Virus record (IMG/VR): IMGVR_UViG_3300020172_001601
Location: 62,001 to 126,000 of that record
DNA: 64,000 nucleotides
Reading direction: 5' to 3' (one strand)
Shown here piece after piece: positions 23,297-63,466 of this stretch; position 1 is the stretch's first letter, and each line of letters starts with the position of its first letter. The position numbers were made by a program, and so were the translations under genes. Under the pieces are notes generated by a model. That model ran no database searches. It was not told where the DNA came from and saw only the letters and a list, made by a program, of their open reading frames with translations.

Positions 23297-24124
23297 ATGG
23301 CAGTCAATCTTGGTCCCCTCGGTCCTTCTGGTCCTCCAGGTTTACTTGGTCCTGTTGGAGTTGATCCAACATGGTATCAACCTTGTCGTGGGGCCGAAGA
23401 TGGCGGCTATACAATTCGCATCTGCCCGCCATTGAAGGGCAGAAAGTTTTGCTTGCGAACTCGCAATCATCGAGTTGGCAGCAAGACGTTTCAATGTCAC
23501 AAAGAGGTCGTTGACAATAAATGGCAAGGCGAATGTGCCATTTGCGATCAATATAGCAAGTTGTGGAAAGAGTATTTGGGCGATGGCTTTGAAATGCTGT
23601 CTTCTACTCCTATGTCCAAGCCAAGATTCTTCCCAGGAAGTCTCGAAGACTTTAAGCGTGAACTCACCGCAATTAAACCCAACGAACGATATTACTTCAA
23701 CATTATTGTTCGTGACGAAGAAGAACGTGGCGTTGTTAAATGGTCCTGCGGCAAGACCATATACACCAAAATCCTTGAAGGCATTGTGGGAAACGAAAGC
23801 AACCCAAATGTGCCTCGGCTTGGTGATATAACCGATCCCAAAAAGGGATATGATCTGCATATCCGAAAGATTGCAAAGAATGGCGGTGGCTCTCACGGGT
23901 GGCCAGATTATTCTGCTTCTCAGTTCTTGCCATCTACGCCGCTGGGTAAACCTAAACAAATCAAATTGTGGTTATCGCAATTGCATGATTTGTCTGCGTT
24001 GCGTATATTGTCTTCTAAGGAGAGCATGGAATCTGCTCTCGAAGACGTGTTTGGGCATCTCGGTGCTGTGAACCCAAAACAAAAATATCGCTCTCTGACC
24101 GACCCATTTGAACCAGCGTGGTAA
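23297..24124 (+). CDS. T4 gp32-like single-stranded DNA-binding protein
   Basis: IRICPP, H/C/CAIC Zn site, RYYFNI, GKTIY, DPKKGYDL, PDYSAS. Confidence 0.75.
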   Translation: MAVNLGPLGPSGPPGLLGPVGVDPTWYQPCRGAEDGGYTIRICPPLKGRKFCLRTRNHRVGSKTFQCHKEVVDNKWQGECAICDQYSKLWKEYLGDGFEMLSSTPMSKPRFFPGSLEDFKRELTAIKPNERYYFNIIVRDEEERGVVKWSCGKTIYTKILEGIVGNESNPNVPRLGDITDPKKGYDLHIRKIAKNGGGSHGWPDYSASQFLPSTPLGKPKQIKLWLSQLHDLSALRILSSKESMESALEDVFGHLGAVNPKQKYRSLTDPFEPAW

Positions 24125-24134
24125 TAGATAACAT

Positions 24135-24548
24135 ATGCTCCCTAGCAAGCTAAAACTCTTTTTTGATGGGTCATGCGAGCCAAAAAACCCCGGTGGAATA
24201 GCTGGGTATGGATGGCGTCTAGTTGACATGGATGGCAACGAGGTCGGGACAGACCGTGGTGAGGTCTGCCGGGGTCCGGGAGCAACAAACAATATTGCAG
24301 AATGGGCAGGTGTAACGAATGGATTGCGTTACCTAAAAGAAAAAGAATGGCAAGGCACGCTGGAAATACTCGGCGACTCTCAGCTTGTCATTCGACAATT
24401 GCTTGGTGAATATAAGGTTCGCAAAGATACCTTAATCCCTTATCATCAAGAGTGCATGGGCCTACTGAAAGACCTTCAGTGGAAGGCAACGTGGATTCCA
24501 CGAGAACAAAATGAGGAATGTGACCGGCTTTCTAAGCACGGAGATTGA
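24135..24548 (+). CDS. rnhA: ribonuclease HI family protein
   Basis: FDGSCE..NPG, TNNIAEW, GDSQLVIRQ, WIPREQNEECD. Confidence 0.9.
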   Translation: MLPSKLKLFFDGSCEPKNPGGIAGYGWRLVDMDGNEVGTDRGEVCRGPGATNNIAEWAGVTNGLRYLKEKEWQGTLEILGDSQLVIRQLLGEYKVRKDTLIPYHQECMGLLKDLQWKATWIPREQNEECDRLSKHGD

Positions 24549-24606
24549 TCGAGGTATATCCTTCCCATATAATTGAACATTCCAGCTTCAAATATGGGAG
24601 ATCAAT

Positions 24607-25854
24607 ATGCAGGTCAATTATCGTGTTTCAGCATCGGGCTATCCTGTTTACCATGTTCAAATGAAAGATGCCTCAGTATGTGAGGCGCATATCGTGTCTA
24701 ACTGTGGGTCTGCCCACGAAGACGCTGATTCTTGGGGCGTGGCACACTTCCTGGAGCATATGTGCTTCCAAGGAACTCCCACTAAGAACAAACATCAAGT
24801 AAGCCGTGAACAGTCCTTGATTGGTTCGTACAACGCATACACAAACCAATTCAATACTGTCTATCACTTCGACGCACTTAACGAAGACTTTGAGAAAGGT
24901 TTTGTTCTTCTTAAAGAAGCCGTCTTCGATTCTTGTTATCCTGAAAAGGAATTCGAGAAGGAAAAGAGTGTTATTGTCGAAGAGTGGAGGATGTATGACA
25001 ATTATCCTTCCGAACACTTTTCTGACTATGTGATCGAGAAGTGCTTTGGGGCCGAAGAAGGCCACCCAATCATCGGCACAGAAGAGTCTATTCGGGGCAT
25101 GAATCCCGAAAAGCTGCACAGATTCAGAAACAAGTGGTACGGCAAAAACAATATCTTTGTTGTTATTGTTGGTAACTTGGATTTTGAAAAGGTGATGGAA
25201 GTCGTTGACAAAACACTCCCGCCAGCACCAGAAGTAGAAACCAGCCCTGTATGTTTGAACGGCGTCTTTGCAGATCAACCGAAGTACACTTTCGAGACTG
25301 ATCGCTTTGAACAAGCTGCATTCGGCATGGTTCGCAAGTGGTCATCGCCAAAAGAGGTTTACAAGAACCGCTATATTGCGAGCTTCTTTTCCTCTGCTTT
25401 GTCTAAGTATATGTACGAGTATATTCGAGACGACCTGGGCTTGTGCTATGGTGTCTGGAGCAGTCGCTTCCGTCACTTCGATAATTCCAATTTGATGATC
25501 TCGATGCTCACCAATAATGGATACTTGGAGAAGGCCGAAACTGAACTGGCGAATTTGTTTTCCAAAATTAAATCAGAGGGCTTCCCGAACGAAGTCTTTG
25601 AGATTGCCAAGAAGAGTTTGACTTATAACCAAGTCAAAACGCTTGATAACGTGGGCGGCATCGCTGGCTCAGTGGTTTTTGGTGTGCTTGGCTCGTCTGA
25701 CAAAGACTGGTTCTTGACTGAAGGACAAAAGGGCATGGACCCTGTTTGGCTCAAGTCTGTGGCCGCACAACTGACCCAGGAAGACCTGAAGGAATTTGCT
25801 AACACTTGGCTCGGCGACTTCACGAAGTTCGCTATGGTTTCAACCAAGAAGTAA
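24607..25854 (+). CDS. M16 family zinc peptidase
   Basis: GVAHFLEHMCFQGT HxxEH; NAYT; EKSVIVEE; IRDDLGLCY. Confidence 0.9.
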   Translation: MQVNYRVSASGYPVYHVQMKDASVCEAHIVSNCGSAHEDADSWGVAHFLEHMCFQGTPTKNKHQVSREQSLIGSYNAYTNQFNTVYHFDALNEDFEKGFVLLKEAVFDSCYPEKEFEKEKSVIVEEWRMYDNYPSEHFSDYVIEKCFGAEEGHPIIGTEESIRGMNPEKLHRFRNKWYGKNNIFVVIVGNLDFEKVMEVVDKTLPPAPEVETSPVCLNGVFADQPKYTFETDRFEQAAFGMVRKWSSPKEVYKNRYIASFFSSALSKYMYEYIRDDLGLCYGVWSSRFRHFDNSNLMISMLTNNGYLEKAETELANLFSKIKSEGFPNEVFEIAKKSLTYNQVKTLDNVGGIAGSVVFGVLGSSDKDWFLTEGQKGMDPVWLKSVAAQLTQEDLKEFANTWLGDFTKFAMVSTKK

Positions 25855-25910
25855 GTGCTTTACAGGTCAGTTGATTTGTGGTACTATCAGACGTAAGGAA
25901 CGGAGATACC

Positions 25911-26414
25911 ATGAAGTACGTCGAAGCATTCTCAATGGAACACCCGGCTCAATATCGAGGCGGGCCTCTAGGCAATATCGTCCCAGGCGAAAACAGTTTA
26001 TTCCTGGGCGGTGGCATCACGGGCTGTTTTGATTGGCAGGCCGAAATGTGTCGCCTATTGAAAGATGTGGACGACCTCGTGGTACTCAATCCTCGGCGCA
26101 AGAACTGGCCGATGAACGACCCTAGCGCCACTGACAAGCAAATCAAGTGGGAATACGAACATCTTCAGACAGCGAACATGATTATGTTCTGGTTCGCCCC
26201 TGAGACGCTGTGTCCCATCACTCTGTTTGAATATGGCAAGTGGTTGGTTCGCAACAAACCACTGTTCGTCGGTTGTGATCCGCAATATAAGCGGCTTCTC
26301 GACGTGCAGGTTCAGACTGCTCTGGAGCGACCCTTCCAGAAAGTTCATACGAGTCTTGAAGAAGTGGCAGATAGCATTCTGCTACATATCGACAGATACA
26401 CGGCGACTGAGTGA
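25911..26414 (+). CDS. nucleoside 2-deoxyribosyltransferase-like protein
   Basis: LFLGGGIT..DWQ, LNPRR, QIKWE, PITLFEYG. Confidence 0.85.
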   Translation: MKYVEAFSMEHPAQYRGGPLGNIVPGENSLFLGGGITGCFDWQAEMCRLLKDVDDLVVLNPRRKNWPMNDPSATDKQIKWEYEHLQTANMIMFWFAPETLCPITLFEYGKWLVRNKPLFVGCDPQYKRLLDVQVQTALERPFQKVHTSLEEVADSILLHIDRYTATE

Positions 26415-26693: not shown

Positions 26694-26696
26694 CTT

Positions 26697-26765: not shown

Positions 26766-26766
26766 T

Positions 26767-27388: not shown

Positions 27389-27727
27389 ATGAAATATGAA
27401 AAGATGGAAAACTTGCGACCCTGGGAAAAGAATCCTAAACAATATCTGTTATGCAGAAAGCATAGCATGGTGTTCTTAGAGGGTTGGGAGTGTCCAGATT
27501 GTGAGCGGTCCCAGGCTCGAAACATATTCGATCCTTGGGAGCCGAGCGTTGAACAAGATCAACAAGAAGAAAACCACGACCCGCTCATTCTGAGTATGGT
27601 CGCAGCGGCAGCAGAAGAAAAGATTCCTATGCCGGGCGTTTACAAACTTGAAGTATGTCCTCTACACAACTTACAATATGTGGCGGGGCTAAATGAATGC
27701 CCGGAATGTAAATGTTGGGCCTCATGA
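27389..27727 (+). CDS. hypothetical protein with two CxxH..CPxC motifs
   Basis: CRKH..CPDC; CPLH..CPEC. Confidence 0.6.
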   Translation: MKYEKMENLRPWEKNPKQYLLCRKHSMVFLEGWECPDCERSQARNIFDPWEPSVEQDQQEENHDPLILSMVAAAAEEKIPMPGVYKLEVCPLHNLQYVAGLNECPECKCWAS

Positions 27728-27798
27728 TTCGGTAACTCAATTGGCAGAGTAGCAGACTCTTAATCTGTTTGTTGTGGGTTCGACTCCCACCCGGATCA
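27726..27798 (+). tRNA. tRNA-Lys(CTT)
   Basis: GCAGA-CTCTTAA-TCTGT. Confidence 0.9.
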
Positions 27799-27800
27799 CT

Positions 27801-28025
27801 ATGGAAAACTTCAAAGGCATATTGGCTGGAGTTGGAATAAACGACCTACAGATGTTAGGCCGAGCCGTCAGGCCCTTGAACAACAAGGACGTTACTTGGA
27901 ATGGCTCTCAATATTCCATCAATGCCTTTTTCGATCAATTTGGATACGAAACGCCGATTCATTTGACGATAAAGAAAAAGAAAAAGTATCGCTCGATTGA
28001 CGAACCGTTCGAGCCGAGTTGGTAA
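27801..28025 (+). CDS. small protein with shared C-terminal motif
   Basis: ends KKKKKYRSIDEPFEPSW. Confidence 0.6.
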   Translation: MENFKGILAGVGINDLQMLGRAVRPLNNKDVTWNGSQYSINAFFDQFGYETPIHLTIKKKKKYRSIDEPFEPSW

Positions 28026-31047: not shown

Positions 31048-31386
31048 ATGAGTGAAACAATAACGCTCCCGGAGCCAAAAGAGAAAGTAGATAACAAGAC
31101 TGATAATAAGACTAAGCGTCAACCGCCATATAACGTCATTCTGATGAATGACGACGATCATACGGTCGAATATGTCGTGACGTTGTGCCAAAAAATATTT
31201 GGCTTTCCAATAGAGAAGGGTCTATTGAAAGCCAAAGAGGTTCACGAACAGGGTCGGTCTATTTTGTGGACTGGCGCTCTCGAATTGGCCGAGTTGAAGC
31301 AAGAACAAATTCACGCTGTTGGCAAAGACCCGCAGATTAAACGCTGCAAGGGTAGTATGACTGCGGTACTGGAACCGGCAGCGTAA
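31048..31386 (+). CDS. clpS: ATP-dependent Clp protease adaptor ClpS
   Basis: PPYNVILMNDDDHTVEYV..EVHEQGRS. Confidence 0.92.
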   Translation: MSETITLPEPKEKVDNKTDNKTKRQPPYNVILMNDDDHTVEYVVTLCQKIFGFPIEKGLLKAKEVHEQGRSILWTGALELAELKQEQIHAVGKDPQIKRCKGSMTAVLEPAA

Positions 31387-32116: not shown

Positions 32117-32386
32117 ATGGCAAGAATCAGTAAAATCATTTGGATCGAAGATGATGATGGGACGATTTCTTTGGACACAATTCCTGGCATGACTCGTCAG
32201 GATATATTCCAAGCATCCCTTATCATGACCGATAAAGGCCGCATTCTGAAAAATCGTACTGGTCCGGCCAATCAAATGATTCCGTCATTCGAGCTTGTGA
32301 AGCAAGCGGTCAAGCCGCCCAAGAAAAAAACCAAGACCAAATATCGTTCGATATACGATTCGATGGATGTGAAAGCTGAATTATGA
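32117..32386 (+). CDS. hypothetical protein with C-terminal motif variant
   Basis: KKKTKTKYRSIYDSMD. Confidence 0.55.
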   Translation: MARISKIIWIEDDDGTISLDTIPGMTRQDIFQASLIMTDKGRILKNRTGPANQMIPSFELVKQAVKPPKKKTKTKYRSIYDSMDVKAEL

Positions 32387-33254: not shown

Positions 33255-35201
33255 GTGGAACAGCTAGTGTTTTATGCGGTCGCAGCAGGCGTTGTCCTAC
33301 TCAGTGGTTTGTTTTTGTTTTGGCTCGGCTTCCGATATATCCCCAACCCAAAAGTGGGCATCGTCGAAAAGCTATGGTCCCGCAAGGGATCATTGAGTGA
33401 AGGCAACATCGTTGCCCTCAACGGCGAGGCCGGTTTCGAGGCTGATATTCTTCGAGGCGGTTTTCATTTTGGATATTGGCGGTGGCAGTATTCCGTGCAT
33501 AAACGGCCTCTGATTACCATCAAGCAGGGCAAGATGGGTTACGTCTTTGCTCGCACTGGCGAAGCACTAGGCCCTAGCCAAACGCTTGCCAAGGTCGTGG
33601 ATTGCAATCACTTCCAAAACGTGCAAGCGTTCCTAGAACATGGCCAGAAAGGTCGTCAACGAGCCATTCTTCGTGAAGGCGTATACGCCATCAACTTGGC
33701 TGTATTCAGCGTCATTACCGAAGACGGTATTTTCGCTATTGACGCCGACCGTGATCTGGCCGAATGGCAGCAACACTTGGCAGAAATCAACGGCTTCGAT
33801 CCAGTTGTGATTGGCAGTAATGCCGAGAACAAAACTGACAATATCGGCGTCGTAACTACGCATGATGGGCCTTCCTGCCAACAGGGAGAAATCATTGCTC
33901 CTCCTGTCGGCAATGAAGTTGGTGATGAAAACTATCACAACAACTTCCAGGACGTTGAAGCCTTCTTGAAAGCTGGTGGTCGTCGTGGAAAGCAATACGC
34001 CAGCTTGATCGACGGCACATACTTCATCAATCGTTGGTTTGCCACGATTGAGCTTATCCAGAAGGAAACCATCGAGATCGGCGAAGTCGGTGTCGTGGTG
34101 AGTTACTTCGGTAAGCAGGGCGACGATACATCCGGCAAGCAGTTCCGACACGGCGAACGAGTCCATCAGGGCGAGCGTGGTGTGTGGGACAATACGCTGG
34201 GGCCGGGCAAGTATCCGTTCAATACTTATGCTGGCAAGATCATCCGTGTGCCTACGACAAACTTCGTATTGCACTGGATCACCGGCAAGTCCGAAGGTCA
34301 CAAGTATGATGAGAGCCTGAAGTCCATCGACTTGATTACGAAGGATGCCTACGAGCCGATTCTACCGCTTTCCGTGGTGGTGCATATCGACTACCAGAAG
34401 GCTCCGAACGTCATTCAGCGATTTGGCGACGTGAAGAAGTTGATTACGCAGACCATCGACCCGATGTTGTCGGCGTACTTCCGAGACGTGGCGCACAAGA
34501 AGACTATGTTGGAACTTGTCCATAGCCGTGATGAAATCCAGCAGCAGGCTCGGAATGAACTCAAGGCGAAGTTTGAACAGTTCGACATTCAGTGTGTGGA
34601 CGTGCTGATCGGTAAGCCCGAAAGCAAGTCGGACGATGGCAAGATTGAGAATTTGCTCGAACAGCTTCGTCTCCGTCAGTTGTCGTTGGAGCAGATCGAA
34701 ACCTACGGCAAGCAAGAGGCGGCAGCGGCTAAACGTCAGACGTTGAATGAAGCCAACGCTAAGTCTGAAATGCAGGCAGAATTGACTCAATCCTCAATTC
34801 AGATCAGCATTCAGACGAACGAGGCTGAAGCACAACTGGCACGAGCCAGGAAAGACGCCGAGCGTAAGGTCGTTACGGCCAAAGCCGACAGCGAAAGTAT
34901 TTCGCTTGAAGGCAAGGGTCAATCCGACAAGATCAGCTTGGTTGGTACGTCCGAAGCTGACGTGCTTCGCAAGAAGGTCGAATCGTTCGGCGATGGAAAG
35001 TTGTACGCTTTGTCCTTGGTGGCTGATGCACTGTCTCATAGCGAGCAACCGCTTGTGCCTGAGACGGTTCTTGGTGGCTCAGGTGACAATGGCGGCATGA
35101 TGGCAACTTTGATCGGTTTGATTACCGCCGAGAAACTTGGCGTTAAGATCGGGCCGATTCAGAAACCGGAAGTGCAACCTGCCGAGGCCGAAAAGGTCTA
35201 A
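33255..35201 (+). CDS. SPFH/band-7 (flotillin-like) protein
   Basis: N-terminal TM, repeated domain, SPFH core, coiled-coil C-terminus. Confidence 0.85.
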   Translation: MEQLVFYAVAAGVVLLSGLFLFWLGFRYIPNPKVGIVEKLWSRKGSLSEGNIVALNGEAGFEADILRGGFHFGYWRWQYSVHKRPLITIKQGKMGYVFARTGEALGPSQTLAKVVDCNHFQNVQAFLEHGQKGRQRAILREGVYAINLAVFSVITEDGIFAIDADRDLAEWQQHLAEINGFDPVVIGSNAENKTDNIGVVTTHDGPSCQQGEIIAPPVGNEVGDENYHNNFQDVEAFLKAGGRRGKQYASLIDGTYFINRWFATIELIQKETIEIGEVGVVVSYFGKQGDDTSGKQFRHGERVHQGERGVWDNTLGPGKYPFNTYAGKIIRVPTTNFVLHWITGKSEGHKYDESLKSIDLITKDAYEPILPLSVVVHIDYQKAPNVIQRFGDVKKLITQTIDPMLSAYFRDVAHKKTMLELVHSRDEIQQQARNELKAKFEQFDIQCVDVLIGKPESKSDDGKIENLLEQLRLRQLSLEQIETYGKQEAAAAKRQTLNEANAKSEMQAELTQSSIQISIQTNEAEAQLARARKDAERKVVTAKADSESISLEGKGQSDKISLVGTSEADVLRKKVESFGDGKLYALSLVADALSHSEQPLVPETVLGGSGDNGGMMATLIGLITAEKLGVKIGPIQKPEVQPAEAEKV

Positions 35202-39528: not shown

Positions 39529-40437
39529 ATGAACATCACACGCATTGCTCCGTCGCCGACCGGCGATATGCACATTGGCACTGCCAGAACCGCATATTTC
39601 AACTGGCTCGCAGCACGGGCCAGCGGTGGTAAGTTCATTCTTCGGGTGGACGACACCGATCAGAAGCGAAACGATCCAGCCTATACAGAAGTCATTCTGT
39701 CCACAATGAAGTGGCTAGGTTTGGACTACGATGAGATCGTCTTCCAGAGTTCCAGATTCGACGTATACAAGGCCGCAGCGGGCTTGTTGATCCATGAAGG
39801 CTGGGCCGTTCCAAAAGATGGAGCCACGGTTTTTAACTTGAAGAAGGACCATGTTTTTCCTTCTCATTGGAAGGACGAAATCAAGGGCGACATCAAGATC
39901 AGCGATGATGACATATCCCATATGGATGGGATGGTTCTCATTAAGTCTGATGGGAGTCCATCTTATAACTTTTGTTCGATTGTTGATGATTTGCACATGG
40001 GGGTCAACCTAATCATCCGTGGAGTGGATCATATAACAAACACAGCAAAGCAGGTGATGCTTTGGGATGTCCTCAATAGCGGACAGACGATACCAAGGTT
40101 TGCCCACCTGGGTCTTATTTGCATTGATGGAAAGCCTATGTCCAAAAGAGACGGGGCATCGAGCATGTTGAATTACATGAACGCCGGATATGATTCCGAC
40201 GCCATGTTGAATTTTCTTGCACGCCTTGGTTGGGGGCCAACAAAGGACGACAAGTCCACAACCCTATTGCCGAGAGACAAGATGCTTGAAATGTTTCTAA
40301 CTTCGGGTAAGATGAGGAGTCAGCCAGCTAGTTTCGATTCTGGCAAATTGGAGTCGTTCGACCGCAAGTACAAGGCCCGTAAGGGGACTTGGCGAACGGG
40401 CGACAAGTTGATTTCTGACACTAACAAAGAGGCATAG
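39529..40437 (+). CDS. glutamyl-tRNA synthetase family protein lacking anticodon-binding domain
   Basis: RIAPSPTGDMHIG, LRVDDTD, IIRGVDH, KPMSKRDG; only 302 aa. Confidence 0.85.
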   Translation: MNITRIAPSPTGDMHIGTARTAYFNWLAARASGGKFILRVDDTDQKRNDPAYTEVILSTMKWLGLDYDEIVFQSSRFDVYKAAAGLLIHEGWAVPKDGATVFNLKKDHVFPSHWKDEIKGDIKISDDDISHMDGMVLIKSDGSPSYNFCSIVDDLHMGVNLIIRGVDHITNTAKQVMLWDVLNSGQTIPRFAHLGLICIDGKPMSKRDGASSMLNYMNAGYDSDAMLNFLARLGWGPTKDDKSTTLLPRDKMLEMFLTSGKMRSQPASFDSGKLESFDRKYKARKGTWRTGDKLISDTNKEA

Positions 40438-42034: not shown

Positions 42035-42370
42035 CATGCCAAGGGCGTCTTGGATTCATCGTGTTGATGCCCGCCGATTTCATTCGGCGGCAAGAATGAT
42101 GGAAGACGATTTGGAAGGTGCCTACTTGACCTGTAGGGAAAAGTACGGTGCAGAAGTGGCTGGAGTAGTGTTGGTCACAATACTCCGACAAAAATTGAAC
42201 AACAATCAAGACCAATGGCCTCCACCGGAAGACCTTATTCGCAAGGTGAACAACTTTCTCGTGGAACACGGCTTAATGATTGATTGAATTTGTTGACTGG
42301 ATGTGGGGTGCGAACCTCACCATGACATAGTGTGTCTGGTCAAATAACTCGAAAGGCAATGGTGATTACG

Positions 42371-46671: not shown

Positions 46672-49233
46672 ATGGGTTCGTTCAAAGATACGCTGCAACT
46701 CCCGAAAACCGATATGCCCATCGCTGCCAACTTACCGGCCAGCGAACCCGCCGTTTACGCATCCTGGGGCAACGTCTATTCCCGCTTGAAGCGAGACGGG
46801 AAGAACCCTTTCATTCTTCATGATGGCCCGCCGTATGCTAACGGCGATATTCATATCGGCCATGCTCTCAATAAAATCCTCAAAGACTTCGTTGTGAAGT
46901 TCCAATACTTCAACGGGCGAGCCGTCGAGTTTGTCCCCGGCTGGGACTGTCACGGACTTCCGATTGAATCGAAGGTTTATTCCATCATCCGAGTTGGCGG
47001 CGGCAATCCCAGCAAAGAGCCGTTGGAATTAGTCCAACGCATGTGTCGGAAATATGCCGGTGAGCAAATTGCTAAACAAAAAGAGCAATTTCAAACCCTG
47101 GGCGTAATCGCCGATTGGGAAAACCACTACGAGACGATGAGTCCGTGGTTTGAAAACATGATCTCTCAGCGACTTGCTGAATTGCGGGATCATGGATATT
47201 TGGTTCGCCGCAAGAAGCCTGTCTATTGGTCTTGGTCTTATGGCACTGCACTGGCTGAGGCAGAAGTCGAATATCGTGACCGAGTAGATAATTCGGTGTA
47301 TGTCGTATTCAAAACTGATAAGTTCCCTTGGGGGCTTTTGGTTTGGACCACAACGCCGTGGACACTTCCGGCCAACGTCGCCGTGGCATTGAACCCCAAG
47401 ATGAAATATCTTGCTGTTCGTGTGCGAGATTACAATCTCCCCGTGCTAGTAGCTGCCGATCTTGTCAAGACCTTGACAGATAAAGGAATCATTGAGCATG
47501 TCTTTGACCTTTATAGTGCGCAAGGCGACGAGTTCAATGGTTGGCAATTTCAACATCCTGTTTATCCCGACCAAACCGTGCCGTGCGTAATGGCCGACTT
47601 TGTGTCCGCTGATAGCGGCACTGGTTGTGTACATATCGCCCCTGGTCATGGAGAAGAAGACTATCGAGTAGGGTTGGCGAATAATCTTCCGGTCGTCATG
47701 CCTGTTGACGGAACGGGCAGATACACCGAGGGCAAATACGAAGGTCAATGGATTTTTGATGAAACTGACGGTTCGTATAAAGAATACAACTCGAATCCCA
47801 ATATCCTTGCTGATTTAAGGGAGCGTGGTCTATTGGTTCATACTGAGAAGATCACTCACAGCTATCCCTATTGCAGCCGATCTGGAACGCCGGTCATCTT
47901 CCGTGCTACTGAACAGTGGTTCTTGGACTTGGACAAGATTCGCAATCTGATCTTGGGGCCGATGACTGCTATTGAGAATGTGCAGTTCTATCCAGAGCAT
48001 TCCAAGAACCGTATGGTTCCGATGCTGGAGAACCGCCCTGACTGGTGCATCAGTCGCCAGCGAGTATGGGGCGTGCCGATCTTTGAAGGACCGGACATTC
48101 TTGACGTATGGTTTGATTCAGGATTGACGTGGAACATCCTGGGAGATCGTCAGGCTGACGTTTATCTGGAAGGCAACGATCAGCACCGTGGATGGTTCCA
48201 GAGCAGCCTATGGCTGTCTGTGGCCCTTCAGGGCGTTGCGCCATACAAGAAGGTCATCACGCATGGCTTTGTTGTCGATCAAGACGGCAAAAAGATGGCT
48301 AAGTCCAAGGGCAATGTCGTGTCGCCATTGGAAGTGACTCAAAAGCAGGGAGCAGAAGTGCTTCGCTATTGGGTTGCGAGCATTGACTATACGAAGGATG
48401 CGCAGTGCAGCCCGGAGATCATGAAGCGTGCTGCCGAGGGCCACAAGAAACTTCGTAATACTTTCAGATTCCTAGTGGCAAATATGCCCAAGGAATCTCC
48501 GTATAAGAACGACCAGAATATGGTTTTCCTGCCGGTCAATCGTTGGATTTACGAAAAGACTCAGAAGGTCTTTTCTGAAGTCCATCAGTTGTTTGCCGAC
48601 AACCTGTTCCATGCTGGTCTGCAAAAGTTGACGGAGTATATCAATACTGATTTGAGCGGTATTTACATGAACGCCGTCAAAGACTGCTTGTATTGTGATG
48701 CTGTCGATAGTGTGTCCCGAAAGAATGTTGTTCACGTCATGAGTAAAATCCTCAAGGCGATGATGACGCTTGTGGCTCCGTTGTTTACCTACACGGCGCA
48801 GGAAGTGTTCAATTATTGTCCTGAATGGGTGAAGGGTGACGCCAAGGATATTTTCGATCTTCAATACGAAGCATTGCCAGACTTGCCGCCACACTTGGCT
48901 CGGATGGACGAAGCGTATTGGAAAGAGGCGTTGTCCGCATTCCATACTGAGTTCGACAAGATCAAGACCGCAGGCAAGGCTCGTGATACTTTGGAAGTCG
49001 TTATTGAATCGACTTCTGGTGATACGTTCTTTGTCGGGGCTGAAGATTGGTTTGTCGTAAGTCATTGGGCATCACATCCTTCAACCTGTGAGGCCCTGGG
49101 GGAATTCTCGGTGGGCGACAAGGTTTATCGGATTGTCAAGAGTCAGAAGAATAAGTGCGAACGATGCTGGAAACGCAATGCAGAACAGGAGTTATGTCCT
49201 CGCTGTCTCGGTGTGGTGAATCCGCAGGTTTGA
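46672..49233 (+). CDS. ileS: isoleucyl-tRNA synthetase
   Basis: HDGPPYANGDIHIGH, WTTTPWTLP, DWCISRQR, KMAKS, C-terminal CERC Zn finger. Confidence 0.97.
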   Translation: MGSFKDTLQLPKTDMPIAANLPASEPAVYASWGNVYSRLKRDGKNPFILHDGPPYANGDIHIGHALNKILKDFVVKFQYFNGRAVEFVPGWDCHGLPIESKVYSIIRVGGGNPSKEPLELVQRMCRKYAGEQIAKQKEQFQTLGVIADWENHYETMSPWFENMISQRLAELRDHGYLVRRKKPVYWSWSYGTALAEAEVEYRDRVDNSVYVVFKTDKFPWGLLVWTTTPWTLPANVAVALNPKMKYLAVRVRDYNLPVLVAADLVKTLTDKGIIEHVFDLYSAQGDEFNGWQFQHPVYPDQTVPCVMADFVSADSGTGCVHIAPGHGEEDYRVGLANNLPVVMPVDGTGRYTEGKYEGQWIFDETDGSYKEYNSNPNILADLRERGLLVHTEKITHSYPYCSRSGTPVIFRATEQWFLDLDKIRNLILGPMTAIENVQFYPEHSKNRMVPMLENRPDWCISRQRVWGVPIFEGPDILDVWFDSGLTWNILGDRQADVYLEGNDQHRGWFQSSLWLSVALQGVAPYKKVITHGFVVDQDGKKMAKSKGNVVSPLEVTQKQGAEVLRYWVASIDYTKDAQCSPEIMKRAAEGHKKLRNTFRFLVANMPKESPYKNDQNMVFLPVNRWIYEKTQKVFSEVHQLFADNLFHAGLQKLTEYINTDLSGIYMNAVKDCLYCDAVDSVSRKNVVHVMSKILKAMMTLVAPLFTYTAQEVFNYCPEWVKGDAKDIFDLQYEALPDLPPHLARMDEAYWKEALSAFHTEFDKIKTAGKARDTLEVVIESTSGDTFFVGAEDWFVVSHWASHPSTCEALGEFSVGDKVYRIVKSQKNKCERCWKRNAEQELCPRCLGVVNPQV

Positions 49234-54139: not shown

Positions 54140-54919
54140 CTAATTTTTGATGTTAAAGGACTTTGAAACCGTGGTTAAACCATCTGCTGAATCAATTGCG
54201 ATTCGTACTTTGCCAAGCACGGCATCTTGGCTAAGTGTCAGATTCACTCGTTCCAGAGGATCAAAACTCTGTACGAATTCCTGCACCATCTGAATCAGAA
54301 AGGAAGGGGTTATGCCCGGCAGCAATAACTCCTGTTGGTGCATTTGTTTTTTACGAATCTCCAACACCTGAGAGCGTGTATATCTTCGGTGGCCTTTTGT
54401 GGTATACTGTGGTTCAATCTTGCCCTGTTCTTCCCAATTTCTGAGAGTTTGTGACGAGATGCCAAGCAACCTAGCCGCCGAGTCAATACTCATGAGTTCT
54501 TCTGGTTCATCGCTCACCGGCAGGTTATTTGCGATTTTGATCCAGTTGTGGCATTCTTTGCCTTCACTCGTAGCGTCCTTACCCTTGAACTCCTTGATGG
54601 CACGTCTCAGGTTAATTGGAGTATTCGCTTCCTTACTAACCCGCCCGATGAAATCGAGCAGTTCGGGTTCGGACTTATACCATTCCCCTTTGATGCGAAG
54701 ACCGCTGAAGCGTTGGTGTAGCTTCATTTCTTCTGATATATCACCGGGAACAGCGCCCAATACTCTAAAGTTTGTGTCGTTGATTTTCACCGAATTGAAG
54801 CCGATCTGTATTGCTCCGGCCTCGATCTTAGTTGAGTTTTCACCACACCCGCAACAGAACTCGCTTAGGGCCTGGATGAAATAAATTGTCTTCTTCATTG
54901 GTGAATTTCCTTCTTTCAT
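54140..54919 (-). CDS. T5orf172/GIY-YIG-like domain fused to MerR-type HTH
   Basis: LHQRFSGLRIKGEWY; AARLLGISSQTLRNWE..GHRRY. Confidence 0.7.
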   Translation of the reverse strand: MKEGNSPMKKTIYFIQALSEFCCGCGENSTKIEAGAIQIGFNSVKINDTNFRVLGAVPGDISEEMKLHQRFSGLRIKGEWYKSEPELLDFIGRVSKEANTPINLRRAIKEFKGKDATSEGKECHNWIKIANNLPVSDEPEELMSIDSAARLLGISSQTLRNWEEQGKIEPQYTTKGHRRYTRSQVLEIRKKQMHQQELLLPGITPSFLIQMVQEFVQSFDPLERVNLTLSQDAVLGKVRIAIDSADGLTTVSKSFNIKN

Positions 54920-59146: not shown

Positions 59147-60796
59147 ATGAACGAATTCCATATTTCGGAAAAAGACAACAACACCACGTTCGTCACAACG
59201 GCGATTGATTATCCGAACGCTCTGCCACATATCGGCACAGCATTCGAGAAGATCGGCGCTGACGTATACGCCCGGTTCCGTCGTTTCCAGGGTCGTGATG
59301 TATATTTCACGATGGGCAACGACGAGAACACTGTGAAGGTTCTCAAAGCAGCAAAAGCCGTAGACAAGCATCCTCAGCCATATGTCGATGAAATGGCCGA
59401 TGCGTTTAAGGCTGTGTGGAAAGAACTCAACATTTCCTTTGACGACTTCATTCAGACCAGTGAAGATCGACACCTGTTGGGTGTTCAGAGATTCCTGCGT
59501 GCTGTGAATTCCGCTGGTTATATTGAGAAGCGACCATACAAGGCTTTGTATTGTGAGGGCTGTGAAGAGTTCAAGAGTCCAAATAGCTTGGACTATGCAA
59601 AGCGATGCCCGAACCATACTGGCACACCTTTGGTGGAACGGGAGGAAGAGAATTACTTCTTTCTTCTGTCTGCATTCAAGCAGCGTGTGGCTGATTTGAT
59701 TTATCCCACTCCATTCCTCACTGCCTTCCTGAGTATTGAGCCTGAGTCTCGCTACAACGAAGTCACTAAGTTCATCGACACGGAACTGACGGATATTTCC
59801 ATCAGTCGCCGTAATGAAGGCTGGGGCATTCCAATTCCGTGGGACGACACCCAAGCCACCTATGTCTGGTTCGACGCTTTGTTGAACTATTTGACTGTGA
59901 TTGGTTTTGGGAACGATTGGGAGAAATTCCAAAAGTATTGGCCTGCTGAAGTTCACTTCATTGGCAAGGACATTACTCGGTTCCACTGTGCATTGTTCCC
60001 GGCAATGTGCATGGCCTATAACGAAGGATGTGATAAGCTGGGTGAGCCTCAATACAAGTTGAAGGCTTTTCCTCAGCGTGTATTTGCACACGGCTTCGTC
60101 AATCAAAAGAAGGGAAGTCAGGTTGTCAAGATTTCCAAGAGCGGAGATTCAATCCGACCTGGAGAACTGATTGAGCAGTTCGGGTCGGATGCGTACAGAT
60201 ACTATTTCTTGTCGAAGTTCAACTACGATACGGACGGTGAATATAGCCTGGACCACTTTAGAGAAGTGTATAACGCCGACCTCGCCAACTCCTTGGGCAA
60301 CCTTGTGAGTCGCACCGTAGGAATGTCGTTGCAGTATTTCGACGGGAAGATTCCACCGATGGTCGCAGAAGGCCAGCCTTGGCTTGATGAGAAGACGGCG
60401 TTGGAATACGAGCAATTTATTGTTGATTGTTGTTCGTATCGGCACGCTATTGAATGGACGTGGAAGATCATCTTCAACGCCAACAAGTTGATCGAGAATT
60501 CAAAGCCGTGGGAATTGGTTAAGTTGCCCGGCAACACCTGTGGTCAGGTGTTGGGCCAACTTGTGGGCAGTCTGAGAATCATCAGTCTGTTGATCCGACC
60601 GTTCACGCCAGCGGTGGCCGAGAAGATTTACACGACGTTTCAGTGGGCTGAAGGATGGAATGAAGTTGATTGGGAGTTCGTTAAGAAGTTGGCGACGAAC
60701 AACTTCCTGGGACTCGAAAACGGTATTGCCATCAACAGGAATGTTTTAGATAATGCTGGAAAGTTTCCGGTGCTTTTTCCGAGAGTCAAATCATGA
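59147..60796 (+). CDS. metG: methionyl-tRNA synthetase
   Basis: TTAIDYPNALPHIG, ISISR..WGIP, YVWFDAL, IGKDI, KISKS, LANSLGNL. Confidence 0.96.
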   Translation: MNEFHISEKDNNTTFVTTAIDYPNALPHIGTAFEKIGADVYARFRRFQGRDVYFTMGNDENTVKVLKAAKAVDKHPQPYVDEMADAFKAVWKELNISFDDFIQTSEDRHLLGVQRFLRAVNSAGYIEKRPYKALYCEGCEEFKSPNSLDYAKRCPNHTGTPLVEREEENYFFLLSAFKQRVADLIYPTPFLTAFLSIEPESRYNEVTKFIDTELTDISISRRNEGWGIPIPWDDTQATYVWFDALLNYLTVIGFGNDWEKFQKYWPAEVHFIGKDITRFHCALFPAMCMAYNEGCDKLGEPQYKLKAFPQRVFAHGFVNQKKGSQVVKISKSGDSIRPGELIEQFGSDAYRYYFLSKFNYDTDGEYSLDHFREVYNADLANSLGNLVSRTVGMSLQYFDGKIPPMVAEGQPWLDEKTALEYEQFIVDCCSYRHAIEWTWKIIFNANKLIENSKPWELVKLPGNTCGQVLGQLVGSLRIISLLIRPFTPAVAEKIYTTFQWAEGWNEVDWEFVKKLATNNFLGLENGIAINRNVLDNAGKFPVLFPRVKS

Positions 60797-60995
60797 GTAG
60801 GTTGTCGTTGGTTCTCGGATTAGTCATTGGGTTTTGGGCGGGCCATTGGTTCGCCCGAACTTCATGGCATCAAAGATGGTACGCTCAGTGGTATGAGGGG
60901 TTTCTCAACGGCGCTGTTGTTGCAGCAATACTGGTAGGCATCTACTTTATTGTCATAAGAAGCCGTAATCAATCTTAGTGGTATAATTAAACACT

Positions 60996-61760: not shown

Positions 61761-61836
61761 GGGTTGAACGGTGAGTCCAATCGGTAAGGCGCAAGTCGCT
61801 CCGATGTAACTGAGGGTTCGATTCCCTCCAACTCCA
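61760..61836 (+). ncRNA. Ala-type tRNA-like domain without D stem or anticodon (mini tmRNA-like)
   Basis: GGGGTTG/CAACTCC-A (G3:U70), GAGGG-TTCGATT-CCCTC, ATCGG/CCGAT stem capped by GCAA hairpin. Confidence 0.65.
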
Positions 61837-62122
61837 CTATGAATGAAAAACCAGCAGATGGCGTCCGAGGCTTTTTTCTTTACAGTCCGTTTTCGCATCG
61901 GCACTTCTTCCGTGTTTACGGAGAAGTCGATCCGACGACGGGCCATAAGACGTTCACTGATTACAAGGTGTGCGCCGAAGATATAGAAGTCACTATTGAA
62001 GCAAATGGGTTGTCCCTGTATGAAGGGGATGAAGATAAAAACCGTCTCGATTGGTCCAGTCGTGTCTTAGGAAGAGATGGCAAAGACCACCTGGATGTGC
62101 GAACACCAAAAAAGGAACAGTA

Positions 62123-62611
62123 ATGGGACTTGCATTGCGTGTAGATGGAAATACTTATGCTGAGTGGGCATATTCTGGATATGGTCAATTCAGGAAGAAG
62201 ATTGCCGCTCAGGTCGGAATTGATCTCCATCAAATGGAAGGATTTCACAATGTTGATAAGTCAATATTGTCCATTCAGGGTTGGGAAGCCTACCGAGAAG
62301 CAATTGAAACCGATCTGTCCCAGGAGAAGATTAGCTGGGACACAGTGAATGATCCCATCAAGATTTTGCTGAATCATTCTGATTGTGAGGGAGAAATCCC
62401 GGCTGAGGATTGCAAAGTCTTGGCTGACCGGCTTGAGCAAATCATTAAGGAATGGCCTGAGCGGGTTAAATTGAAGACCGATCCTTTCTGGCAGGATCGA
62501 GGCTATCCAGCAGAATTAGACCTGGATGCTTACGACACAACACAGGCAAAGGGTCTTATTGCGGGTTTGCGAGAAGCTGCTAAAATTGGCAAGCCCGTAG
62601 AATTTTCCTGA
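62123..62611 (+). CDS. phage hypothetical protein
   Basis: WAYSGY..LLNHSDCEGEI. Confidence 0.65.
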   Translation: MGLALRVDGNTYAEWAYSGYGQFRKKIAAQVGIDLHQMEGFHNVDKSILSIQGWEAYREAIETDLSQEKISWDTVNDPIKILLNHSDCEGEIPAEDCKVLADRLEQIIKEWPERVKLKTDPFWQDRGYPAELDLDAYDTTQAKGLIAGLREAAKIGKPVEFS

Positions 62612-62961
62612 TACGATCACTCCTTTATTATGTCTGAAAGATATAATGAACCAAGGAGTAAATCATGGACAAAGACTACGCAAAAGCTGTTTCCAACTTC
62701 GAGCAAGCGGGAGCGCACCTGGGAAACTTCGCCACATTATTGTTCACATATCATAAATCGCTATGTGAATCCGGCTTCCAGAGAGACGAAGCATTGGAAT
62801 TGGTGAGAGAACTCCAGACGACCTTATTTGCACAGGCTTTTAATTTCGGCCCACAACCGAGTCAAGATGATGACGACTAAAGTAATCATTGTTAAGCCAG
62901 AAAGATTTGCAGGAACGGTCGCTGTTTATAGGCGACCGTTTTTCGTTACCGGAGCAATACA

Positions 62962-63219
62962 ATGAGTGACTGTGAAGTAGCCCAATTCAAAAGAATAAGC
63001 ATTCCTTTGATGAGGAGGATATATCCTCAGCTTATTGCCAACCAGATATGCAGTGTTCAGCCATTGGCTGGCCCAACTGGTTTAGTGCATTATTTGCGAT
63101 ATAAATATTCTGAGAACAAGGGTGGCATCATCAACACTGATGGCTGGACCATCAAACCCAAGAAGAAAAAGATTTGGCGTGACATCAACGATCCGTGGGA
63201 GCCTTCTAGCAATGGCTAA
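62962..63219 (+). CDS. mini-protein homologous to a segment of T4-like major capsid protein gp23
   Basis: IPLMRRIYPQLIANQICSVQPLAGPTGLVHYLRYKY. Confidence 0.75.
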   Translation: MSDCEVAQFKRISIPLMRRIYPQLIANQICSVQPLAGPTGLVHYLRYKYSENKGGIINTDGWTIKPKKKKIWRDINDPWEPSSNG

Positions 63220-63466
63220 GAATATATGGTATCGTATACGCAAGACGCTTGGGATGTTGTCCTATGAGGAACGTCGCCTTGAATCGACTGAGTGGGCAAG
63301 GAACTCGATCAGGGCGCAAATGATACATCCTGATGTTGTTTTGGACGCATCCAAGATTACAAAGGGGGCCGAGAATATTCCCGGTCCTCAACCCGTTCCC
63401 AAAAAAGAGAAAGTGCGGCCCAGGTCAATTCTCGAAGATTGGGAAGTAACCCAAGATTCGGGCTGA
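63212..63466 (+). CDS. hypothetical protein with C-terminal motif variant
   Basis: KKEKVRPRSILEDWE. Confidence 0.55.
   Translation: MAKNIWYRIRKTLGMLSYEERRLESTEWARNSIRAQMIHPDVVLDASKITKGAENIPGPQPVPKKEKVRPRSILEDWEVTQDSG

What the first reader, a model, noticed from the sequence alone, without database searches (positions are those of the whole stretch)
24076..63466. Shared C-terminal peptide tag on unrelated proteins: K-rich-[YW]R[SD][IL]x[DE]P[FW]EP
Seen: gp32-like SSB ends KQKYRSLTDPFEPAW (24124); ORF 27801 ends KKKKKYRSIDEPFEPSW; the Gol-like ORF ends KKKKIWRDINDPWEPSSNG. Variants are KTKYRSIYDSMD (32117), KVRPRSILEDWE (63212) and internal ARNIFDPWEPS (27389). Inference: a short linear docking or targeting signal (virion packaging, compartment import, protease adaptor, or Lys-rich acceptor for the phage Ubl system).
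Basis: partly seen in the sequence, partly recalled or inferred. Interest (0 to 1): 0.72.

Follow-up and report, generated by a model that had tools for sequence, protein, structure and literature searches.

The report
Shared docking tag on huge-phage proteins
A huge bacteriophage puts the same short peptide (a run of lysines followed by Y/W-R-S-I-x-D-P-F/W-E-P) on the end of its DNA-binding protein SSB and on at least eight unrelated small proteins, which most likely lets them all dock onto one still unidentified partner.

Summary
All six peptides are at the stated places. The core pattern occurs 7 times in the 340-kb genome against 0.04 expected, and 6 of these lie in the last 22 residues. 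Different codons encode it in each copy, and the carrier proteins resemble each other only in the tag. Genome-wide I find about ten carriers. They include the gp32-type SSB, a free-standing copy of the capsid protein's Gol segment, a terminase-ATPase-like protein and zinc-ribbon proteins. The tag is kept in every close SSB homologue (44-86% identity) and in about 36 Gol mini-proteins from other huge phages. It sits in predicted disorder and can be C-terminal, internal or N-terminal. Its variants change together within a genome. Another huge-phage lineage uses a different shared tail, W-x-K-E-G-F. More distant gp32-like SSBs carry an acidic DDDFLxxL tail instead, as T4 gp32 does. So this is a modular short linear docking motif. 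The nearest precedent is T4's shared (S/T)LDFL clamp-binding tail, and bacterial SSB tails are a second. The receptor is unresolved: one co-folding test gave no answer. Candidates are a replisome platform or SSB itself, the neighbouring M16 peptidase and ClpS, the phage's ubiquitin-like conjugation system, and the prohead.

The parts
23297..24124 (+). gp32-type SSB (275 aa). The tag KQKYRSLTDPFEPAW* is encoded at 24077-24121.
   Evidence: Pfam PF08804 at 1.8e-12. The tail is kept in 16/16 homologues of 44-86% identity, with R265, P273 and W275 invariant. In the AF2 model the tail has pLDDT about 57 and no secondary structure.
27801..28025 (+). Protein B (74 aa, P0001, no known domain). The tag KKKKKYRSIDEPFEPSW* is encoded at 27972-28022.
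   Evidence: Homologues of 36-74% identity in L004, L007 and L028 keep the tag almost unchanged.
27389..27727 (+). Protein C (112 aa) with two CxxC...CxxC zinc ribbons. The motif ARNIFDPWEPS lies internally in the acidic linker, encoded at 27515-27547.
   Evidence: The motif is conserved in L004 (ARSIFDPWEPS), L007 (PRNIFDAWEPS) and L028 (SRSIFDDWQPS).
32117..32386 (+). Protein D (89 aa), three genes downstream of the phage ClpS. The tag variant KKKTKTKYRSIYDSMD is encoded at 32321-32368.
   Evidence: Homologues in L007, L028 and L029 end KYRSIYDPSDIQDDL*, IYRSIFDPTDIQADL* and KYRSIYDSMDMNADL*. The Atlas model has pLDDT 0.38.
62962..63219 (+). Protein E, the 'Gol mini-protein' (85 aa). It is a free-standing copy of the Gol segment of the T4-type major capsid protein, followed by a linker and the tag KPKKKKIWRDINDPWEPS, encoded at 63154-63207.
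   Evidence: Pfam PF07068 positions 1-51 at 5e-15. It is 78% identical to residues about 68-125 of the 491-aa capsid protein of LR756511. About 36 distinct homologues keep both halves. The AF2 model is essentially unfolded, with pTM 0.19.
63212..63466 (+). Protein F (84 aa). Its ATG overlaps the stop of E (ATGGCTAA). The tag variant KKEKVRPRSILEDWE is encoded at 63401-63445.
   Evidence: coding score supports the 63212 start.
63958..64000 (+). Start of protein K (169 aa, runs to window position 64467, outside the window). It ends in a truncated tag, KPQRIWRYIDEE*.
   Evidence: The syntenic 161-aa protein of L032 ends KPQKQHRSIDDE*.

Best explanation
The peptide is a modular short linear docking motif. 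It consists of a basic run followed by an extended stretch whose alternate residues (R, I/L, D/E, W/F) are conserved and which is stiffened by two prolines. Some copies add a terminal [S/A]-W-COOH. It is the C-terminal partner-recruitment tail of this clade's gp32-type SSB, where it takes the place of the acidic DDDFLxxL-type tail of other gp32-like SSBs. The same peptide has been grafted onto at least eight other proteins of the phage. These are small, disordered or zinc-ribbon proteins, a free-standing Gol segment of the capsid protein, and a terminase-ATPase-like protein. I infer that all carriers dock through the tag onto one receptor site that co-evolves with it. In this way they are brought to, or compete for, the platform that SSB uses. 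This is the logic of T4's (S/T)LDFL tail, which is shared by the polymerase, gp55 and gp33 and binds the sliding clamp, and also the logic of bacterial SSB C-terminal tips. What is shown: the enrichment, selection at peptide level, modularity, the disordered context, co-variation within a genome, and replacement of the classical SSB tail. What is inferred: that there is a single receptor, and what it is. My first choice is a DNA-replication or packaging platform protein, or the SSB core itself. The platform protein may lie in the roughly 31% of the genome missing from the record.
For: The tag is enriched 175-fold and concentrated at C-termini. It is not a DNA repeat and the carriers are not paralogues. 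The consensus from 68 distinct instances has R in 67/68, I/L/V in 68/68, D/E in 63/68, P in 57/68 and W/F in 67/68. All 16 close SSB homologues keep the tail, although the SSB body is only 44-52% identical in phages whose RNase H is 80-87% identical. Mean pairwise identity is 0.69 for the tag and 0.41 for the linker in the Gol mini-protein family. The tag is C-terminal in most carriers, internal in the zinc-ribbon protein, and N-terminal in H and in P0085. The context is disordered. Tag variants co-vary within a genome: in L034 both SSB and the Gol mini-protein carry YRSIDD[DQ]W without the P..EP, and L032 has five neighbouring genes with RSIDD-type tails. A different lineage, L031, has six otherwise dissimilar small proteins, its Gol mini-protein among them, that end in W-x-[KRT]-[ED]-G-F*. 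More distant gp32-like SSBs of about 300-350 aa carry an acidic DDDF[LM]xxL tail instead, like T4 gp32's TDLDDLLNDL*. T4 gp43, gp55 and gp33 share (S/T)LDFL tails, and these are interchangeable clamp-binding epitopes (PMC2988020). The gp32 C-terminal region recruits partners such as Dda (PMC11551737).
Against: No receptor has been identified. The only co-folding test (SSB 1-258, RNase H and M16 peptidase against protein B) scored 0.00, which the tool rates as no answer. AF2 does not dock the SSB tail onto its own core. No sliding clamp (gp45 or beta) is detectable in the record. The phage's PolIII-alpha-type polymerase carries neither the tag nor an obvious clamp motif, whereas in T4 the polymerase is a tag carrier. 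A capsid-protein fragment and a terminase-like ATPase are not obvious clients of a replisome platform. All relatives found are fairly close (60-90% identity for core proteins), so part of the conservation reflects shared ancestry.
Confidence: 0.6

Rival explanations
1. The tag is a processing or degradation signal. The neighbouring M16 (MPP-like) metallopeptidase would cut at the invariant R-x|[I/L/V], following the 'arginine at -2' rule, or after the Lys run. The new N-terminus would be I/L, or W/Y/F followed by R, and the phage ClpS would read it and pass the fragment to ClpAP.
For: The M16 peptidase gene lies two genes downstream of SSB here and in L009, L005 and L029, and it has an intact HFLEH site. 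ClpS is a constant neighbour of tagged genes in the window, L007, L009, L028 and L029, and in the distant L034 it lies directly between the Gol mini-protein and SSB. The phage ClpS keeps the N-degron-binding N-D-D and His residues, and Val stands where E. coli ClpS has its gatekeeper Met (the gatekeeper controls selectivity according to PMC7966870). R and the aliphatic residue two positions later are the most invariant tag positions, and the residue before R is W/Y/F in 63/68 instances.
Against: In most carriers the tag is at the extreme C-terminus, so a cut would release only a peptide of about 9-12 residues carrying the degron. The strongly conserved downstream part (D/E-P-W/F-E-P, plus terminal W in SSB) is not explained by an R-2 site. 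Acidic residues next to the new N-terminus disfavour ClpS (from memory). M16 is missing from the SSB neighbourhood in L006 and L007. The co-folding job that included M16 gave no answer.
Confidence: 0.12
2. The tag is the address label of the phage's own ubiquitin-like conjugation system. The motif would dock the E2-like enzyme (or the BubE-type deconjugase), and the adjacent lysine run would be the acceptor.
For: The window encodes an E2-like protein (1527-2639), a 348-aa neighbour of unknown family, a JAB peptidase (3755-4678), an E1/ThiF (4723-5538), a 110-aa beta-grasp-like protein ending in Gly (5604-5936), and a DUF6527/BubE protease (21660-21929). In related bacterial systems the E2 is thought to pick targets directly (bioRxiv 10.1101/2024.11.21.623953). 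A lysine run directly precedes the motif. LR756511, whose SSB lacks the tag and which has no Gol mini-protein, also has no tblastn match to this E1 or E2.
Against: The basic run freely mixes Arg with Lys, and one SSB homologue (P0013..FRRQFRSIS..) has no Lys before the motif, which suggests charge matters rather than an acceptor. Co-occurrence rests on one negative genome. The loci from L031, L032 and L034 show tags without visible E1 or E2 within the 3-20 kb available. There was no binding test.
Confidence: 0.12
3. The tag is a prohead or virion loading signal, like encapsulin cargo-loading peptides or the T4 capsid-targeting sequence. It would bring early-acting proteins into the capsid or to the portal.
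For: Carriers include a capsid-protein fragment, a longer Gp23 paralogue ending IFNPWQPS* in L009, and a terminase-ATPase-like protein. The tag can sit at either end or internally, as compartment-targeting peptides do. Many carriers are very small proteins. The [I/L]-x-[D/E] core resembles the T4 prohead-protease site (from memory).
Against: An SSB needed for replication is an unlikely obligate cargo, yet it is the most constant carrier. No capsid, portal, scaffold or prohead-protease gene is in the record for testing. There are no virion proteomics.
Confidence: 0.1
4. The tag binds the SSB core itself. [quoted passage not shown] The other carriers would then use it to load onto SSB filaments or to cap them.
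For: The SSB tail reads K-x-K-Y-R-S-[IL]-[ST], that is, basic residues followed by Ser/Thr, in most homologues. The N-termini of this SSB clade are unconserved and disordered, so no N-terminal cooperativity element is evident. The acid-plus-aromatic pairs (D-P-F-E-P-x-W) resemble ssDNA-mimicking SSB tails of other phages (from memory).
Against: AF2 leaves the tail undocked. The co-folding job with the SSB core gave no answer. Several carriers have no obvious connection with ssDNA.
Confidence: 0.15
5. The similarity is chance, a DNA-level repeat read in frame, or ordinary paralogy.
For: The regex was defined after seeing the data.
Against: There are 7 observed against 0.04 expected. The codons differ. 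The carriers are similar only in the tag. The tag is conserved in independent genomes and protein families.
Confidence: 0.01

Closest known systems
T4-type sliding-clamp-binding C-terminal epitope, (S/T)LDFL(F/Y/L), on gp43, gp55 and gp33
   Same: A short C-terminal peptide joined by a variable linker and shared by unrelated proteins of one phage. It docks them onto one hub and is interchangeable between carriers (PMC2988020). The tails were read here from NC_000866: ASLDFLFG*, PSLDFLYEAND*, TNTLDFLL*. The flavour is similar: a small polar residue, an aliphatic one, an acid and an aromatic. T4 gp32 itself ends TDLDDLLNDL*.
   Different: The sequence consensus differs (basic run, invariant Arg, two Pro). 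No clamp gene was detected in the record. The polymerase here is PolIII-alpha-like and untagged. Carriers include SSB, a capsid-protein fragment and a terminase-like ATPase.
C-terminal partner-recruitment tails of single-stranded DNA-binding proteins (T4 gp32 C-terminal region; bacterial SSB D-D-D-I-P-F tip; T7 gp2.5 tail)
   Same: A disordered SSB C-terminus ending in an aromatic residue that recruits other proteins (gp32-Dda: PMC11551737; the others from memory). In this clade the tag occupies exactly that position on a gp32-type SSB.
   Different: Those tails are acidic and, apart from T7 gp4 (from memory), are not known to be copied onto other proteins. Here the tail begins with a basic run and is shared with at least eight non-SSB proteins.
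Compartment or capsid targeting peptides (encapsulin cargo-loading peptides, microcompartment encapsulation peptides, T4 capsid-targeting sequence)
   Same: Short, portable, position-tolerant address peptides on unrelated cargo proteins (from memory).
   Different: There is no sequence likeness, no shell or prohead partner was tested, and SSB is an atypical cargo.
T4 Gol peptide (gp23 residues about 93-122), which binds EF-Tu and triggers the Lit protease
   Same: Protein E is a free-standing copy of exactly this most conserved capsid-protein segment. In T4 the segment binds EF-Tu domains II and III (PMC3014915). E lies beside translation genes: PTH2 and MetRS here, and PTH2, RF-1 and MetRS in L032.
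   Different: In T4 the segment is part of the capsid protein. Here it is a separate, unfolded 66-124-aa protein fused to the tag. EF-Tu binding was not tested.

Membership tests
T4-type clamp-binding C-terminal epitope | Sequence consensus (S/T)-L-D-F-L-(F/Y/L) at or near the C-terminus | tested here: not met
   The T4 tails read from NC_000866 differ from the tag consensus (K/R)n-[WYF]-R-[SDN]-[ILV]-x-[DE]-P-[WF]-E-P. Only a loose S-aliphatic...acid...aromatic likeness remains.
T4-type clamp-binding C-terminal epitope | A sliding clamp encoded by the phage, and the replicative polymerase among the carriers | tested here: not met
   PF02916, PF09116, PF00712 and PF02768 give no match in the record. 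The PolIII-alpha-like polymerase has no tag. The record is only about 69% complete, so absence of a clamp is not proven.
T4-type clamp-binding C-terminal epitope | One portable peptide shared by unrelated proteins of the same phage | tested here: met
   About ten carriers are similar only in the tag. The tag occurs at the C-terminus, internally and at the N-terminus.
gp32-type acidic C-terminal (A-domain) tail | Acidic, Ser/Asp-rich C-terminal region ending in D-D-(F/L)-L-x-x-L | tested here: not met
   It is present in T4 gp32, in LR756511 and in the long SSB homologues. In the short SSB clade that includes the window's SSB, the basic-run tag stands in its place.
Bacterial SSB C-terminal tip | Homotetrameric OB-fold SSB ending in acidic D-D-D-I-P-F | tested here: not met
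   The protein is gp32-type (PF08804) and ends D-P-F-E-P-A-W after a basic run.
M16/MPP presequence cleavage site (arginine at -2) | Basic segment, Arg two residues before the scissile bond, bulky hydrophobic residue after it | tested here: inconclusive
   The pattern fits: a K/R run, R in 67/68 and I/L/V in 68/68 two positions later. An M16 gene with HFLEH is adjacent. Cleavage is not testable here, and co-folding gave no answer.
ClpS N-degron | Free N-terminal Leu/Phe/Tyr/Trp, favoured by Arg/Lys at position 2 | not testable with these tools
   The tags are not N-terminal as encoded. [WYF]-R would become an N-degron only after a cut, and that cut is not shown. The phage ClpS keeps its binding residues.
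Ubl-conjugation target site | Obligate acceptor lysine next to an E2-recognised motif, co-occurring with E1, E2 and Ubl | tested here: inconclusive
   The E1, E2-like, JAB, Ubl and BubE genes are present. Lys is replaced by Arg in several tags and is absent in P0013. Co-occurrence was checked in one negative genome only.
DNA repeat or paralogous C-terminal domain | Nucleotide-level identity, or homology extending beyond the peptide | tested here: not met
   Nucleotide identity is 33-67% with mostly different codons for identical residues. BLASTP similarity is confined to the tag.

The most novel reading that the evidence does not exclude
Huge phages run lineage-specific 'address tag' systems: the K-run-[WY]RSIxDPWEP tag here and W-x-K-E-G-F in another lineage. 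These tags would couple bait fragments of the very proteins that bacterial immune sensors recognise (the capsid-protein Gol segment, the terminase ATPase domain, SSB) to a phage-encoded effector. That effector could be the phage's ubiquitin-like conjugation enzymes, or the M16 peptidase with ClpS. Host sensors or EF-Tu that bind the bait would then be modified, degraded or sequestered, making this a phage-made targeted-degradation adaptor system.
Probability: 0.1. Interest if true: 0.92.

Novelty: new variant of a known kind. Interest (0 to 1): 0.68.

Why it matters
Shared docking peptides are the wiring of viral replication machines. T4's clamp-binding tail couples replication to late transcription, and bacterial SSB tips organise genome maintenance. 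Here a new, sharply defined tag links the SSB of an uncultured huge-phage clade to about nine further proteins of otherwise unknown function. A second lineage has its own tag. This gives a direct experimental handle on dozens of 'hypothetical' huge-phage genes: a 15-20-residue peptide can be used to fish out the receptor. It also singles out a widespread, previously undescribed family, the free-standing Gol-segment mini-proteins found next to translation genes. These mini-proteins may connect capsid-protein and EF-Tu biology, or Lit-type defence, to that hub. If the receptor turns out to be the phage's ubiquitin-like system or a protease adaptor, it would be a new viral strategy.

Tried and rejected
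1. DNA repeat, chance and paralogy were rejected.
2. Co-folding of protein B with the SSB core, RNase H and the M16 peptidase scored 0.00, which the tool rates as no answer.
3. The AF2 model of SSB with 15 homologues does not dock the tail in cis. The AF2 model of the Gol mini-protein with 36 homologues is unfolded, with no confident contact between the tag and the Gol segment.
4. Pfam and PHROG give no family for proteins B, C, D and F. The Atlas gives nothing for D.
5. A PDB sequence search with the tag peptide found no match at E<=10.
6. Searches for a clamp, PolB or PolA, the terminase nuclease domain and a full capsid protein in the record found none. The record is about 69% complete.
7. 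A degenerate DNA pattern for the tag found only close relatives and one chance hit, both in IMG/VR and in JGI metagenomes.
8. The E2-like protein has no relatives in IMG/VR or in deposited phages.
9. I considered eukaryote-style readings (LIR/AIM, 14-3-3 mode 1, SH3 PxxP, NLS) and a membrane-targeting helix and set them aside. The aromatic before Arg is not obligatory (it is A, P or S in the zinc-ribbon family), and the prolines and acids argue against a helix.
10. A canonical beta-clamp motif (QL[SD]LF) was sought in the polymerase and the proteome and not found.

Full report
CONTEXT. The window is bases 62001-126000 of a 340,341-bp linear IMG/VR virus record that CheckV rates about 69% complete. 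It is a huge phage. It has a T4-type capsid-protein signature and a gp32-type SSB. The window alone holds 49 tRNA genes, three aminoacyl-tRNA synthetases and a Ro60 homologue. The only deposited relative is the 595-kb uncultured phage LR756511, and it is distant. Genes are mostly on the + strand.

THE OBSERVATION. All six quoted peptides are present, in frame and at the stated ORF ends. The sixth ORF most likely starts at ATG 63212 and overlaps the stop of the Gol-like gene, because the upstream extension has a negative coding score. The core pattern R[SDN][IL].[DE][PSDE][FWM][ED] occurs 7 times in 551 ORFs against 0.04 expected from residue shuffles. Six occurrences are in the last 22 residues against 0.002 expected, and none of 2000 shuffles reached either count.

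The tag-coding DNA segments are only 33-67% identical. Where two copies have the same amino acid, they mostly use different codons: SSB and protein B share 8 identical residues, and only 2 use the same codon. All-against-all BLASTP shows that the carriers resemble each other only within the tag.

MORE CARRIERS. A profile built from the instances finds further carriers in the same genome.
- G is a 299-aa protein at G000 296300-297199 that ends KKLWRSIWDEWD.... A protein-language-model search places it with terminase large-subunit ATPase domains (score 0.98, 216/256 features). Pfam gives only a weak Terminase_6N hit.
- H is a 68-aa protein at G000 300142-300348 on the minus strand, with the tag at its N-terminus (MKKRRRKLKARSIEEPW...).
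- J is an ORF at G000 298176-298451 on the minus strand that ends KKKPSHRTIDDDWTPPW*. Its start is uncertain.
- K is a 169-aa protein that starts at window 63958 and ends KPQRIWRYIDEE*, a truncated form.

CONSERVATION ELSEWHERE.
- All 16 SSB homologues of 44-86% identity end in [YFW]R[SDN][IL]xx[PAT][FW]xP[ASG]W*. R265, P273 and W275 are invariant.
- The SSB body is only 44-52% identical in phages whose neighbouring RNase H is 80-87% identical. The tail is therefore far better kept than the protein as a whole.
- Protein B homologues of 36-74% identity keep the tag nearly letter for letter. Proteins C and D keep their own variants in L004, L007, L028 and L029.
- In L007 a further protein, a 129-aa PrkA-C-like protein next to SSB, ends KPKYRRIDDPWEQAW*.
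- The Gol-like ORF belongs to a family of about 36 distinct proteins of 66-124 aa on contigs of up to 602 kb. All consist of the capsid-protein Gol segment, a variable linker, a K-rich run and [WY]R[DSN]Ix[DE]P[WF]E. Mean pairwise identity is 0.75 for the Gol segment, 0.69 for the tag and 0.41 for the rest.
- One member, P0085, has the tag at the N-terminus instead.

From 68 distinct instances the consensus is (K/R)3-6, [I/K/V], [W/Y/F], R (67/68), [S/D/N], [I/L/V], x, [D/E], P, [W/F], E, P, [S/A], with a terminal W in SSB and B. The conserved residues fall on alternate positions and two prolines are fixed. This suggests an extended peptide lying in a groove (inference).

STRUCTURAL CONTEXT. 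The AF2 model of SSB has a confident core (pLDDT above 90) and an unstructured tail with pLDDT about 57. The Gol mini-protein is predicted to be essentially unfolded (pTM 0.19), and the tag is its most confident stretch (pLDDT 72-79). Protein D has pLDDT 0.38 in the Atlas. These are the hallmarks of short linear motifs.

CO-VARIATION AND A SECOND TAG. In the distant 2.9-kb contig L034, the Gol mini-protein, ClpS and SSB are adjacent. Both carriers there have the same variant, KYRSIDDDWSGT* and HYRSIDDQWE*, without the P..EP of the window's phage. In L032 five neighbouring genes end in RSIDD-type tails, some cut off right after the acidic pair. In L031, a 477-kb GC-rich phage, the Gol mini-protein and five other small proteins that are otherwise dissimilar all end in W-x-[K/R/T]-[E/D]-G-F*. 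Shared tails are therefore a recurrent, lineage-specific device, as expected if tag and receptor co-evolve.

WHAT THE SSB TAIL REPLACES. A profile search of 1.84 billion representative proteins shows two kinds of gp32-like SSB. Short ones of about 220-260 aa carry the tag. Long ones of about 300-350 aa have a low-complexity acidic region ending in DDDF[LM]xxL[RKQ]x[MI]. LR756511 belongs to the second kind, and T4 gp32 ends TDLDDLLNDL*. In T4 the C-terminal region of gp32 recruits partner proteins (PMC11551737). By parsimony the tag does the same job in this clade.

T4 also supplies the closest precedent for sharing. gp43, gp55 and gp33 end in ASLDFLFG*, PSLDFLYEAND* and TNTLDFLL*. These are interchangeable epitopes for the sliding clamp (PMC2988020).

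THE RECEPTOR. This is unresolved. The record has no detectable gp45-type or beta-type clamp and no PolB or PolA. It does have a PolIII-alpha-like polymerase of 933 aa, without a tag.

Conserved neighbours that could be receptors or processors:
- RNase H, directly after SSB.
- An alpha-CTD-like 110-aa protein, directly before SSB.
- An M16 peptidase with an intact HFLEH site.
- ClpS, with conserved N-degron-binding residues and Val where E. coli ClpS has the gatekeeper Met.
- A DUF6527/BubE-type protease.

About 18 kb upstream of SSB the window also encodes an E2-like protein, a JAB peptidase, an E1 and a beta-grasp protein ending in Gly. These give three concrete rivals, namely processing/degradation, Ubl addressing and prohead loading. 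A fourth is binding to the SSB core. I list each with its evidence in the rival explanations.

Against an obligate lysine acceptor: Arg freely replaces Lys in the basic run, and P0013 has none. Against a pure cleavage site: most tags are at the extreme C-terminus, and the conserved part extends well beyond R-x-I.

THE GOL MINI-PROTEIN. The window's copy matches residues about 68-125 of the LR756511 capsid protein at 78% identity, and the record holds no full capsid gene. In T4 this segment binds EF-Tu domains II and III and is the most conserved part of gp23 (PMC3014915). The gene sits next to PTH2 and MetRS here, and next to PTH2, RF-1, MetRS and GluRS in L032. A plausible but untested reading is a two-motif adaptor. 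One end would bind what the Gol segment binds, possibly EF-Tu or a Lit-like sensor, and the other end would bind the tag receptor.

VERDICT. The best description is a new, lineage-specific docking tag of the SSB-tail or T4 clamp-epitope kind, shared by about ten proteins, with its receptor still to be found. It is a new variant of a known kind of device. It is of real interest because it is sharply defined, widespread in an uncultured huge-phage clade, and directly testable with a peptide.

Noticed in passing
window 1527-5936 and 21660-21929: The phage carries a ubiquitin-like conjugation set. It comprises an E2-like protein (1527-2639, weak Prok-E2_D hit), a 348-aa neighbour with no family match (2633-3679), a JAB peptidase (3755-4678), an E1/ThiF (4723-5538), and a 110-aa beta-grasp-like protein ending ..AGVKG* (5604-5936). 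A DUF6527/BubE-type serine protease lies 16 kb away. The E2-like protein itself ends ..DQKKKVW*.
   Followed up: partly
window 10800-39233: There are 49 tRNA genes on the + strand, including two that ARAGORN calls with 2-base anticodons (13664-13738 and 13836-13908). tRNA-Lys (27726-27799) overlaps the stop codon of the zinc-ribbon gene C. tRNA-Ile starts 4 bases after gene B.
   Followed up: no
window 39529-40437, 46672-49233, 59147-60796, 42332-44077, 63439-63915: A translation-related set: a GluRS/GlnRS-like catalytic domain, a class I Leu/Ile/Val-type synthetase, MetRS, a Ro60/TROVE-vWA protein and a PTH2 peptidyl-tRNA hydrolase.
   Followed up: partly
L031:7628-10243 and 20021-20215 (JGI contig Ga0620595_000042, 477 kb): In another huge-phage lineage, six small proteins (63-80 aa), including its Gol mini-protein and several CxxC proteins, all end in W-x-[K/R/T]-[E/D]-G-F*. 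This is a second, different shared C-terminal tag.
   Followed up: partly
proteins P0096-P0230; L003:2884-3939 (LR756511 SSB): Most distant gp32-like SSBs end in a conserved acidic amphipathic tail..DDDF[LM]xxL[RKQ]x[MI]. T4 gp32's TDLDDLLNDL* looks like a member. It also resembles the T4 clamp-binding tails (TLDFLL*, SLDFLF). I did not test whether gp32 tails bind the clamp.
   Followed up: no
window 31048-31386: The phage ClpS homologue keeps the N-degron-binding N-D-D and His residues, but Val stands where E. coli ClpS (1mbu) has the gatekeeper Met. It is a constant neighbour of tagged genes in six related loci.
   Followed up: partly
window 22954-23286: A free-standing 110-aa protein with an RNA polymerase alpha C-terminal domain (PF03118, 8e-10) lies directly upstream of SSB. 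It is conserved in that position in L005, L006, L007 and L009.
   Followed up: no
window 375-1073; window 54140-54919 (minus strand): A sigma-70-family factor (regions 2 and 4) and a MerR-type regulator are encoded by the phage.
   Followed up: no
G000 5659-8460; 11714-12904; 596-1966; 312414-321752: The PolIII-alpha-like polymerase is 933 aa, and its Pfam match starts at profile position 100, so it seems to lack the PHP domain. Also seen: a DHH/DHHA1 (RecJ-like) protein, a collagen-repeat protein, and a 3112-aa ORF with no Pfam match.
   Followed up: no
L009:11182-12231: A 349-aa Gp23 paralogue with a TAT-signal-like N-terminus ends in ..MIFNPWQPS*, a tag-like tail. It sits in the early-gene region between a NADAR gene and ClpS.
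   Followed up: no
G000 298176-298530 (minus strand): Two overlapping ORFs in different frames both have positive coding scores. The tag-bearing one (J) lacks a clear start. This may be a frameshift, either real or a sequencing error.
   Followed up: partly
window 33255-35201; 24607-25854; 25878-26414: An SPFH/Band 7 protein of 648 aa, an M16 peptidase with HFLEH, and a nucleoside 2-deoxyribosyltransferase-like protein lie in the conserved early region.
   Followed up: partly
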